Under the pieces are notes generated by a model that was not told the DNA's origin, searched no databases, and saw only the letters and a list, made by a program, of their open reading frames with translations. From contig OZ260664.1 in NCBI GenBank assembly GCA_965285935.1, forward strand, positions 64,790,001 through 64,854,000: DNA of 64,000 bases, in the 5' to 3' direction. The DNA comes from Ophelia neglecta (taxonomy: Eukaryota). Made by a program: the position numbers and the translations under genes. Below are positions 17,272 to 17,840 of the stretch, in pieces (position 1 is the stretch's first letter; each line of letters opens with the position of its first letter).

Positions 17272-17635
17272 CTCTGCCGCTTCGGCCAACAAATCTCAAA
17301 TCGTTGAACTTGGCCACTTGACTTTTCATATAGCTGGTCGCATTGCGGAGTTCTGCGCAAAAGTTTTCATCATTTCCAGCCGTCAGAGTAACTTTGGTGC
17401 CGTCTTTCACTTCTCCAAGGGCGACAACTTTGAAGGCAACTGGAAGAGTCTTGTTAGATCGCCAGTGGGACGGGAGCACAGAACAGACAAAGTTTGGACT
17501 TCCTGTCCGCACCAGCTCCCCTGGGTGGTCACTCAGAACTGTGCTCAGGGTCCGCTCTCCCGTGATGATGTCCGACATCGTCTGGGGTGAGTCCGGGAAC
17601 GGCGTCGAACCGTTCAACTCTAAACGTAAATGCAT
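17272..17635 (-). CDS. Runx: Runx (Runt-related transcription factor), first coding exon: N-terminus plus most of the Runt domain
   Basis: Translation MHLRLELNG...[87 protein letters not shown] is an unmistakable Runt domain. Phase-1 donor AGAG|GTGGGT at 17271, the conserved Runx intron position after GRSGRG. In-frame TAA 18 nt upstream of the ATG. Confidence 0.97.
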
Positions 17636-17840
17636 GTGGTTAGTGACAAGTTAGGCACTGTGCGGTGTGTTGGTCTGTAGCAGTGACAGTGGGCCGCAAA
17701 ACAAGCGAACGCGTGGCGCTGTGGTTTCAGAATGAGATCAACTATGTGGTTTGGTTTATATAGCGCTCCCACGTACTCAGCCACAAAGCACTGCCCACTT
17801 CCGTATTCGTCCGCCTGCTTGTCAACTCATCATGCCAATC
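17635..17840 (-). promoter_or_regulatory. Runx proximal (P2-like) core promoter and 5' UTR
   Basis: Minus-strand TATATAAA at 17762-17755, Inr TCATTC at 17735-17730 (A+1 about 17733, 29 nt from the TATA start), ETS core CGGAAGTG at 17803-17796, CCAAT at 17835-17839, and four Runx consensus sites (17635, 17661, 17720, 17745). Confidence 0.75.

What the first reader, a model, noticed from the sequence alone, without database searches (positions are those of the whole stretch)
17620..17655. Splice acceptor hidden in the first Runx codons (MHLRL|E): signature of a vertebrate-style P1/P2 dual-promoter Runx in an invertebrate
Seen: the minus strand reads CCTAACttgtCACTAACcacATGCATTTACGTTTAG|AGTTG, i.e. 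a consensus branch point CACTAAC (branch A at 17640) 20 nt before a T-rich TAG ending at 17620, five codons plus one base after the ATG. Established: in vertebrate RUNX genes the proximal-promoter isoform begins MRIPV|D and distal-promoter (P1, MASxS) exons splice into an AG at this same place, five codons plus one base, phase 1. Inference: this gene has an upstream alternative first exon that must lie in the 2.7-kb intergenic gap or inside Supt3h, making the locus interleaved like RUNX2/SUPT3H. The same 36 bp also carry the start codon and a Runx binding site, so they would be triple-coded. A non-coding upstream exon would instead yield a shorter protein from Met20 (ATG at 17578, MSDIITGER).
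Basis: partly seen in the sequence, partly recalled or inferred. Interest (0 to 1): 0.85.

Follow-up and report, generated by a model that had tools for sequence, protein, structure and literature searches.

The report
Hidden splice acceptor in Runx start
Sixteen bases after the start codon of this invertebrate's only Runx gene sits a splice acceptor that related animals (oyster, mussel, ribbon worm) demonstrably use to join alternative upstream first exons, as vertebrate RUNX genes do; its use in this genome is likely but not yet shown.

Summary
The sequence is exactly as described. On the minus strand, CCTAACttgtCACTAACcacATGCATTTACGTTTAG|AG opens the first coding exon of the genome's single Runx gene.

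I found no RNA from this species. The only RNA-like run comes from a related organism. It shows the unspliced proximal transcript running straight across the AG.

The comparative evidence for a real acceptor is strong:
- **Codon 5:** in 15 of 15 spiralian-type Runx loci its third base is A, although the codon encodes L, P, A, T or V. Neighbouring wobble bases vary.
- **Oyster:** RNA contigs from two runs join a different 5' exon exactly at this AG of the oyster genomic exon.
- **Other species:** Mytilus has four N-termini converging on |DLNG. Nemertean, brachiopod, clam and snail models do the same.
- **Interlocking:** in Mytilus edulis one distal Runx exon lies inside Supt3h, as in RUNX2/SUPT3H.

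So the acceptor reading is very probably right and the architecture is probably bilaterian.

Three limits apply:
- The distal exon in this window was not located.
- Interleaving here is untested.
- A two-promoter Runx in an invertebrate has precedent: amphioxus, and public RefSeq isoforms.

Other notes of this scan cover the same stretch (Runx sites, the Supt3h pair).

The parts
17755..17762 (-). TATA box (TATATAAA) of the proximal promoter
   Evidence: Read directly. It lies 29 nt upstream of the Inr-like A at 17733.
17730..17735 (-). Initiator-like TCATTC (A+1 at 17733), the likely proximal transcription start
   Evidence: Read directly. The RNA contig of a related organism starts at 17722 and runs on unbroken (record 2).
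17745..17751 (-). Runx site AACCACA in the core promoter
   Evidence: Motif scan.
17720..17726 (-). Runx site AACCACA in the 5' UTR, 106 nt before the acceptor
   Evidence: Mytilus and Crassostrea have the same motif at -105.
17650..17654 (-). Upstream CTAAC, branch-point-like (A at 17651, 31 nt before the acceptor G)
   Evidence: The mutated mouse Runx2 branch site CGCTAAC lies at the same distance (PMC13152850). The motif is not conserved in the other spiralian loci.
17639..17645 (-). CACTAAC branch-point consensus (A at 17640, 20 nt before the acceptor G)
   Evidence: YTAAC abuts CAC-ATG in 6 of the 14 loci (window included). Others have AAAC or CAAC there.
17635..17641 (-). Runx site AACCACA overlapping the A of the start codon
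   Evidence: ACCAC directly precedes the ATG in 12 of 15 loci (AACCAC in 11). Mytilus and Crassostrea have the motif at the same -21 position.
17633..17635 (-). Start codon of the proximal (P2-type) isoform MHLRL|E
   Evidence: The MHLxx[D/E]LNG N-terminus is conserved across protostome Runx proteins.
17620..17621 (-). AG of the internal 3' splice site; a distal-exon transcript would resume at 17619, phase 1
   Evidence: The A is invariant in 15/15 loci over five codon-5 amino acids. The homologous AG is used in oyster RNA, the Tubulanus gene model and Mytilus isoforms. Use in this genome is not shown.
17272..17619 (-). Exon body common to both isoform types (N-terminal part of the Runt domain)
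   Evidence: Pfam Runt. The exon end at 17272/17271 comes from the RNA contig spliced on to ...KSFNLTITV (record 1).
17576..17578 (-). Met20 ATG (MSDIITGER), the fallback start if a distal exon is non-coding
   Evidence: This Met is conserved (M[ST][DE]) in most relatives and matches vertebrate GKMSE/MSD.
15560..15673 (-). Next Runx exon (C-terminal part of the Runt domain)
   Evidence: blastn of RNA contig L004; Pfam hit in the genome search.
20470..20553 (+). Supt3h first coding exon, head-to-head with Runx; donor CAAG|GTAAG
   Evidence: RNA contig of the related organism, spliced at 20553/4 (record 3). Later Supt3h exons carry the motifs FTAEIQQMM (ends 26368), GLGDCRKPL (from about 62712) and EDFLFLLRRDK.
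26369..62711 (+). 36-kb Supt3h intron, the most likely home of a distal Runx first exon on the minus strand (inference)
   Evidence: In Mytilus edulis the distal Runx exon A lies in the Supt3h intron that follows the same EIQQMM exon. No exon was identified here.

Best explanation
The first coding exon of this genome's single Runx gene is a dual-use exon.

**Proximal use.** Transcripts from the adjacent TATA/Inr promoter start about 100 nt upstream and translate MHLRL-E...

**Distal use.** The AG formed by the last base of codon 5 and the first base of codon 6 (17621-17620) is a 3' splice site. Its branch point would be one of the two CTAAC motifs 20 and 31 nt upstream. One or more distal first exons, transcribed from other promoters, splice into it. 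This replaces the five proximal residues and the whole proximal 5' UTR.

**Overlapping signals.** The same about 36 bp carry a Runx-binding site (AACCACA) over the start codon, so promoter, translation and splicing signals overlap.

**Origin.** The arrangement is homologous to the vertebrate RUNX P1/P2 architecture and probably dates to the protostome-deuterostome ancestor.

**Shown:** the sequence, its conservation, and use of the homologous acceptor in other spiralians.

**Inferred:** use in this species, and the position of its distal exon or exons. The likeliest place is the 36-kb Supt3h intron; the 2.7-kb gap is the alternative.
For: 1. Sequence and coordinates are confirmed. The exon encodes a Runt domain. 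The genome has a single Runx gene.
2. Codon-5 wobble base is A in 15/15 spiralian-type loci, as TTA, CTA, CCA, GCA, ACA or GTA. The wobble bases of codons 3, 4 and 9 are mixed. Arthropod-type loci lack the AG.
3. Crassostrea: RNA contigs from two runs (L085, L086) read ...ATGAATGACGATTTCATTGAAG|ATTTAAAC. They match the genomic MHL exon (L087: ATGCATTTACCTACAG|ATTTAAAC) only from the AG onward. Their 5' 610 nt are absent from the 5.4 kb upstream.
4. Mytilus: four N-termini all join at |DLNG. They are MHLPA, MMEDLSLLDPDET, MMLESAFAKQ and MKLYYK...S. In the M. edulis genome these exons carry GT donors 43 kb and 8 kb upstream of the proximal ATG.
5. Tubulanus genome: the annotated exon 1 (donor ACAG|GTTCGT) lies 1.3 kb upstream. 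It joins just after ttactaatcattttcccacATGATTCTACCTACAG|.
6. Further isoforms are joined at the same residue in Lingula, Gigantopelta and Mya. Mercenaria (Y) and an unnamed protein (H) fit only a phase-1 split. The RNA contig L004 diverges from five relatives exactly at the G.
7. Vertebrate proteins in my own search show MRIPV|D against MASNS...R|D. The literature agrees.
8. The proximal promoter is real: TATA plus Inr, and a relative's RNA contig covering 17722-17496.
Against: There is no RNA evidence from this species. The three runs that hold the stretch are DNA. The only RNA-like run, from a related organism, gives a contig that is continuous across the AG, with no joint or loose end at 17619/17620. 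Contigs drop minor isoforms, so this is weak evidence against. No distal exon was found by homology, donor/ORF scan, CpG profile or Runx-site clusters. The pyrimidine tract is modest. CTAAC overlaps the Runx-site consensus TAACCACA, so its presence need not reflect a branch point. Lineage-specific loss of one promoter is known in lamprey RunxA and RunxC.
Confidence: 0.75

Rival explanations
1. The acceptor is an inherited relic. It is conserved in sequence, but this species has lost its distal first exon(s) and transcribes Runx only from the proximal TATA promoter.
For: The only RNA contig available is the unspliced proximal form. No distal exon was found in 46 kb upstream. Lamprey RunxA lost P1 (PMC4236176).
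Against: The AG and the CTAAC motifs are intact. The acceptor is kept in every spiralian-type locus examined. It is used wherever RNA or RNA-based models exist. The RNA sampled here is one small run of another species.
Confidence: 0.15
2. The distal exon is non-coding, or out of frame. Spliced transcripts would then start translation at Met20 (ATG 17578) and give a protein lacking the first 19 residues, rather than one with a new N-terminal peptide.
For: Met20 and its MSD context are strongly conserved, also in vertebrates. One weak candidate is the donor at 21926, downstream of a tandem pair of AACCACA sites. It has an in-frame TGA just before the donor.
Against: Every distal exon seen in relatives carries its own ATG in frame. 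The apparent 'Met20-start' proteins I checked were a gene-caller artefact, because the contig has the MHL start intact.
Confidence: 0.2
3. The motif is not a splice signal at all. The A at the codon-5 wobble position and the CTAAC/AACCAC would be kept for other reasons, such as Runx autoregulatory binding, start-codon context or N-terminal peptide constraints.
For: AACCACA is a perfect Runx site and is conserved together with a second site 85 nt upstream. CTAAC overlaps the extended Runx consensus.
Against: This does not explain an invariant wobble A 14 nt downstream of the Runx site across five amino acids. It is directly contradicted by transcripts and gene models spliced at this AG in oyster, mussel and nemertean.
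Confidence: 0.05

Closest known systems
Vertebrate RUNX1/2/3 P1 (distal) / P2 (proximal) dual-promoter architecture
   Same: The proximal isoform starts with five residues (MRIPV against MHLRL), then D/E. Distal exon(s) splice into an acceptor inside the first coding exon at that point. A conserved Met follows about 20 residues later. Runx sites lie in the promoter or UTR. A CTAAC branch site sits 31 nt upstream in mouse Runx2.
   Different: No distal exon has been found here. The distal peptides of spiralian relatives are short, varied and not MASNS-like. The proximal promoter here has a TATA box. The tandem Runx sites sit in the proximal region, not the distal one.
Amphioxus Runt with exon-1 (P1) and exon-2 (P2) variants
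   Same: An invertebrate with a single Runx gene and two promoter variants, next to Supt3h (PMC2265531; PMC4236176).
   Different: Amphioxus is a chordate, whereas this is a spiralian-type (protostome) gene. I did not examine amphioxus DNA.
RefSeq and transcriptome isoforms of mollusc, brachiopod and nemertean Runx (Crassostrea, Mytilus, Mya, Mercenaria, Gigantopelta, Lingula, Tubulanus)
   Same: The same MHLxx|DLNG exon, the same AG, and AACCAC before the ATG. Alternative first exons join at the identical residue.
   Different: Those have RNA-based support and located distal exons (1.3 to 43 kb upstream; up to three in Mytilus). This genome has neither yet.
RUNX2/SUPT3H and fugu FrRUNT/FrSUPT3H interlocked gene pairs
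   Same: Runx and Supt3h lie head to head here, with start codons 2.8 kb apart. True interlocking is shown in Mytilus edulis. The linkage is considered ancestral (PMC4236176, PMC533870).
   Different: Interlocking in this window depends on an unlocated distal exon.

Membership tests
Runx (Runt-domain transcription factor) gene | Runt DNA-binding domain | tested here: met
   PF00853, E 6.3e-48, 162 bits against a cut-off of 27. The second Runt exon was found at 15560-15673.
P1/P2 dual-promoter Runx architecture | A proximal first coding exon with its own promoter, starting M-x-x-x-x then D/E | tested here: met
   MHLRL|E. TATA at 17762-17755 and Inr at 17735-17730. A relative's RNA contig runs 17722-17496 unspliced.
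P1/P2 dual-promoter Runx architecture | An internal 3' splice site five codons plus one base after the proximal ATG (phase 1) | tested here: met
   The AG is present at 17621-17620 with CTAAC 20 and 31 nt upstream. The A is invariant in 15/15 loci. The homologous AG is spliced in oyster, mussel and nemertean.
P1/P2 dual-promoter Runx architecture | A distal first exon and promoter in this genome whose transcripts join that acceptor | tested here: inconclusive
   No RNA of this species was available. The related-species run shows no junction. Homology, donor/ORF, CpG and Runx-site scans gave only unverifiable candidates.
P1/P2 dual-promoter Runx architecture | A distal N-terminus of the MASNS type (vertebrate P1 signature) | tested here: not met
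   The distal peptides of spiralian relatives are unrelated to MASNS and to each other. Examples are MNDDFIE, MEEQ, MMEDLSLLDPDET, MMLESAFAKQ, MPALVGI and ...GMIST. Homology therefore rests on the acceptor and the exon-2 side, not on exon 1.
Runx-Supt3h interlocked pair | Supt3h adjacent, on the opposite strand, head to head | tested here: met
   Supt3h exon 1 is at 20470-20553 on the plus strand, spliced in a relative's RNA. Later exons were recognised by conserved motifs.
Runx-Supt3h interlocked pair | The first exon of each gene lies inside an intron of the other | tested here: inconclusive
   Met in Mytilus edulis: the Supt3h range <1-34375 on the minus strand encloses Runx distal exon A at 10001. 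Here it depends on the unlocated distal exon.

The most novel reading that the evidence does not exclude
The whole Runx 5' architecture was already present in the last common ancestor of protostomes and deuterostomes. That architecture comprises a proximal exon with a splice acceptor hidden after codon 5, one or more distal promoters that splice into it, a Runx autoregulatory site overlapping the start codon and branch point, and physical interlocking with Supt3h. The overlap of the two transcription units would then be what has kept Runx and Supt3h neighbours for more than 500 million years. This genome would carry a still undiscovered distal Runx promoter inside the 36-kb Supt3h intron.
Probability: 0.6. 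Interest if true: 0.65.

Novelty: new member of a known kind. Interest (0 to 1): 0.55.

Why it matters
The papers I could read date the Runx two-promoter design to the vertebrate stem (PMC4236176) or report it in amphioxus (PMC2265531). I found no paper describing it in protostomes.

The comparison here shows the same acceptor, at the same codon and phase, kept by purifying selection at a synonymous site. It is used by alternative first exons in molluscs, a brachiopod and a nemertean, and it is interlocked with Supt3h in a mussel.

Three things follow:
- The origin of P1/P2 moves back to the bilaterian ancestor.
- There is a concrete mechanistic reason for the ancient Runx-Supt3h microsynteny.
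- There is a compact example of overlapping codes: start codon, transcription-factor site, branch point and acceptor within 36 bp.

For this genome, it tells annotators to expect additional Runx first exons and isoforms that a single-promoter model would miss.

Tried and rejected
1. **RNA evidence for this species.** The run search found only three DNA runs of the species and one small RNA-like run of a related organism. Laying them gave no joint or loose end at 17619/17620. This is absence of data, not absence of splicing. Four of the 13 differences in that RNA contig are not listed, so I cannot state that the relative keeps the AG.
2. **Homology search for the distal exon.** I searched the window with the 5' exon of RNA contig L004 and with 6 kb upstream of relative L001. 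Only coding exons match, at about 77% nt identity.
3. **'Met20-start' proteins (P0128 and similar) as evidence for non-coding distal exons.** Rejected. The contig L090 carries the intact MHL start, and the gene caller simply chose a later ATG.
4. **Genomic look-ups of Lingula isoform X2 and Mercenaria isoform X3.** Neither is on record.
5. **Donor-site and short-ORF scan of 46 kb upstream on the minus strand.** It gave 35 donors of at least 4 bits. Examples are 23535 (ATG ATC TTA AAA ACA G|GTAAGG, MILKT|E, 8.2 bits), 34975, 62468, and 21926 after tandem AACCACA sites at 22121/22085. None has independent support.
6. **CpG profile.** The only clear island is the shared 16.9-21.0 kb Runx/Supt3h promoter region. 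The peaks at 56.8-57.4 kb and 39.8-40.4 kb look like repeat or transposon sequence.
7. **Phylum of the organism.** Not resolved from this exon. Identity is 76-91% to molluscs, annelids, a brachiopod and a nemertean alike.
8. **The paper 'Evolution of Runx genes I'.** Not held.
9. I searched the gene model exon by exon by reference only. I did not build or search a joined spliced model.

Full report
**Observation**

The minus strand of the window reads ...cagtgCCTAACttgtCACTAACcacATGCATTTACGTTTAGAGTTGAACGG....
- ATG at 17635-17633.
- Codon 5 TTA at 17623-17621 and codon 6 GAG at 17620-17618.
- The AG is therefore 17621-17620, and an exon spliced in here would resume at 17619, five codons plus one base after the ATG.
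- The A of CACTAAC (17640) is 20 nt before the G of the AG.
- Met20 is at 17578.
- AACCACA at 17641-17635 overlaps the A of the start codon.

There is also a second CTAAC, at 17654-17650. Its branch A (17651) lies 31 nt before the acceptor.

The ORF 17635-17273 is the N-terminal part of a Runt domain (PF00853, E 6e-48). The genome (762 Mb, 223 contigs) has only this one Runx gene.

**Local anatomy**

- **Proximal promoter.** TATATAAA at 17762-17755 lies 29 nt upstream of an initiator-like TCATTC at 17735-17730.
- **Runx sites.** Three perfect Runx sites (AACCACA in gene orientation) lie at 17751-17745, 17726-17720 and 17641-17635. This is the only cluster of three or more within 150 nt in the 64 kb.
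- **Exon end.** The exon ends at 17272 with donor AGAG|GTGGGT. The next Runt exon is at 15673-15560.
- **Supt3h.** It starts head to head on the plus strand, with its first coding exon at 20470-20553 and donor CAAG|GTAAG. Later exons are recognisable by conserved motifs...FTAEIQQMM ends at 26368, GLGDCRKPL starts near 62712, and EDFLFLLRRDK lies near 63000. This agrees with the other first-stage notes on this window.
- **CpG island.** The genome is strongly CpG-depleted (mean observed/expected 0.30). The stretch 16.9-21.0 kb is a CpG-preserved island covering both promoters.

**Direct RNA evidence**

The run search returned three runs of the same organism and one small RNA-like run of a different, related organism. 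Laid on 17100-23000, the three cover every bin evenly, so they are DNA.

The related-organism run behaves as RNA:
- One contig is spliced from 17272/1 onto the next exon (...GRG|KSFNLTITV).
- One contig is spliced at the Supt3h exon-1 donor.
- One 227-nt contig runs unbroken from 17722 to 17496, across the ATG and the AG.

So the proximal, unspliced transcript exists in a close relative. No joint or loose end was seen at 17619/17620. Contigs keep only dominant forms and the run is small, so this neither supports nor seriously weakens the acceptor hypothesis.

**Comparative evidence: proteins**

I searched with the exon alone, by reference. I did not build or search a joined spliced model.

The N-terminus MHLxx[D/E]LNG...M[ST]D...GER is shared by essentially all protostome Runx hits. 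Residue 6 is D or E, so its first base is G. Residue 5 varies.

Among longer proteins, several have a different N-terminus that joins the common sequence exactly before that D:

| Species or source | Alternative N-terminus | Proximal form in the same species |
|---|---|---|
| Crassostrea | MNDDFIE\|DLNG | MHLPT\|DLNG |
| Gigantopelta | MEEQ\|DLNG | |
| Mya | ...QLIEH\|DLNG | |
| Lingula | ...DAVDQ\|DLNG | MHLAL\|DLNG |
| Tubulanus | ...GMIST\|DSNG | |
| RNA contig L004 | MPALVGI\|DLNG | |
| Mercenaria | ...FGYK\|YLNG | |
| Unnamed protein | MCIFGVK\|HLNG | |

In the last two, residue 6 becomes Y or H. That is what a phase-1 junction predicts when the upstream exon ends in T or C.

Mytilus has four N-termini on the same |DLNG, repeated in three species' annotations and in transcript contigs. 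They are MHLPA, MMEDLSLLDPD(D/E)T, MMLESAFAKQ and MKLYYK...S.

**Comparative evidence: DNA**

- **Wobble base of codon 5.** In 15 loci with this N-terminus, the third base of codon 5 is A in all 15. The loci are this window, ten metagenome or ENA loci, and the Crassostrea, Mytilus and Tubulanus genomes plus one transcript. The codon is TTA, CTA, CCA, GCA, ACA or GTA, encoding five different amino acids. The wobble bases of codons 3, 4 and 9 are mixed: 9A/3G/2T, 9T/3C/2A and 8T/4G/2A in the 14 loci. Arthropod-type loci (CCC G, AGC G, TCT G) do not keep the AG. A synonymous base that stays fixed while the amino acid changes is the signature of a nucleotide-level signal.
- **Oyster.** RNA contigs from two independent runs match the genomic exon (...ttaaaccacATGCATTTACCTACAG|ATTTAAAC) only from the AG onward. 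Their 610-nt 5' part is not in the 5.4 kb upstream.
- **Tubulanus.** The annotated first exon lies 1.3 kb upstream with donor ACAG|GTTCGT. It joins right after ...ttactaatcattttcccacATGATTCTACCTACAG|, a proximal-type start with a TACTAAT branch motif.
- **L004.** It diverges from five relatives exactly at the G of codon 6.

**Interlocking with Supt3h**

In the Mytilus edulis genome locus the Runx coding range is 10001-60670 on the plus strand. Supt3h (PF02269) occupies <1-34375 on the minus strand.

The Runx first exons map as follows:
- Distal exon A (MMEDLS...) at 10001.
- Exon B, with two starts and donors, at 45206/45240.
- The proximal ATG at 53298.

Exon A therefore lies inside Supt3h, in the intron after the ...EIQQMM exon. 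Exon B lies between the two genes. The intron concerned corresponds to the 36-kb Supt3h intron of this window (26369-62711).

For this window, I could not find the exon:
- There is no homology.
- The donor/ORF scan gives 35 candidates, none with independent support. Examples are 23535 MILKT|E, 34975, 62468, and 21926 after a tandem pair of AACCACA sites.
- There is no convincing second CpG island.

**What it most likely is**

The exon is dual-use. Proximal-promoter transcripts read through the AG and start at MHLRL. Distal-promoter transcripts use the AG as a 3' splice site, lose the proximal UTR and five codons, and bring their own short N-terminus. If the distal exon is non-coding, translation would start at Met20 instead.

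The CTAAC motifs are plausible branch points. The nearer one overlaps the Runx site TAACCACA, so the three signals share bases.

I put 0.75 on the acceptor being used in this species. I put about 0.15 on it being a conserved relic here, since promoter loss is known in lamprey. I put about 0.05 on a non-splicing explanation.

**Comparison with what is known**

In vertebrates the proximal isoform has five specific residues (MRIPV), and the distal exon supplies 19 (MASNS...) joined before D. The phase-1 G|AT split is from my own knowledge of RUNX1.

The mouse Runx2 branch site CGCTAAC lies 31 bp upstream of the exon-2 acceptor, and mutating it suppresses the distal isoform (PMC13152850). The window's first CTAAC is at the same distance and even shares the 9-mer CTAACTTGT. 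The other spiralian loci lack that motif there, so I treat this as a coincidence.

Prior descriptions:
- P1 and P2 variants are reported for amphioxus (PMC2265531).
- The Runx-Supt3h linkage is regarded as ancestral (PMC4236176). Interlocking is described for RUNX2 and fugu FrRUNT (PMC533870).
- I found no paper describing the arrangement in protostomes.
- The isoforms are, however, already in public RefSeq annotation.

The distal peptides of spiralians are not MASNS-like. Homology therefore rests on the acceptor and the exon-2 side.

**Verdict**

The hidden acceptor is real as a conserved, used element of spiralian Runx genes, and it very probably functions here. The distal exon and the interleaving in this genome remain to be shown, and the claim of a first for invertebrates is overstated.

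It is a new member of a known kind. It has moderate interest because it moves the P1/P2 design and the Runx-Supt3h interlock back to the bilaterian ancestor.

Noticed in passing
window 17620-17751; L095 about 53208-53298; L087 about 5345-5435: Two AACCACA Runx sites sit at fixed positions relative to the acceptor. They are at -21 and -106 in this window and at -21 and -105 in Mytilus edulis and Crassostrea. This suggests a positionally conserved autoregulatory pair in the proximal 5' UTR.
   Followed up: partly
window 1-64000, especially 1-25300: Perfect TGTGGTT/AACCACA motifs are enriched across the Runx locus. There are 18 on the plus strand and 11 on the minus strand, against about 4.4 and 3.7 expected from base composition. 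Twenty-two of the 29 lie in the first 25 kb.
   Followed up: partly
window 22079-22121: A tandem pair of AACCACA sites in Runx orientation, 36 nt apart, lies inside the first Supt3h intron. A weak donor (CCAG|GTAATT) follows at 21926 with an in-frame TGA before it. This could be an enhancer or a non-coding first exon. It is not significant on its own.
   Followed up: partly
window 17646-17654, compared with the mouse Runx2 sequence quoted in PMC13152850: The 9-mer CTAACTTGT, with its branch A 31 nt before the acceptor, matches the mouse Runx2 intron-1 branch-site region (CGCTAACTTGTGG, 31 bp upstream). The other spiralian loci lack it, so this is probably a coincidence.
   Followed up: partly
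window 16900-21000 and 13100-13800: The genome is strongly CpG-depleted (observed/expected about 0.30). A 4-kb CpG-preserved island covers the bidirectional Runx/Supt3h promoter region. A second small island (observed/expected about 1.0) lies inside the Runx intron at 13.1-13.8 kb.
   Followed up: no
L095 31700-34300 (Mytilus edulis, minus strand): The Supt3h exon-like unit ...HWFTTEIQQMM plus its donor is repeated about 25 times in tandem at spacings of about 76 and 152 nt across frames. This is an odd tandem array of an exon copy at the 5' end of Supt3h.
   Followed up: no
window 19348-19410: All three DNA runs of the organism carry contigs with a joint 19410>19348 and 10 extra letters (TATCTATTTA). 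This is a small structural polymorphism or repeat-collapse in the G-rich intergenic region.
   Followed up: no
L009-L013, L023-L025 (arthropod-type Runt loci from metagenomes): Arthropod-type Runx first exons keep MHL/MQL but not the AG at codon 5/6 (CCC G, AGC G, TCT G, or no D/E). The hidden acceptor may have been lost in at least part of Arthropoda.
   Followed up: partly
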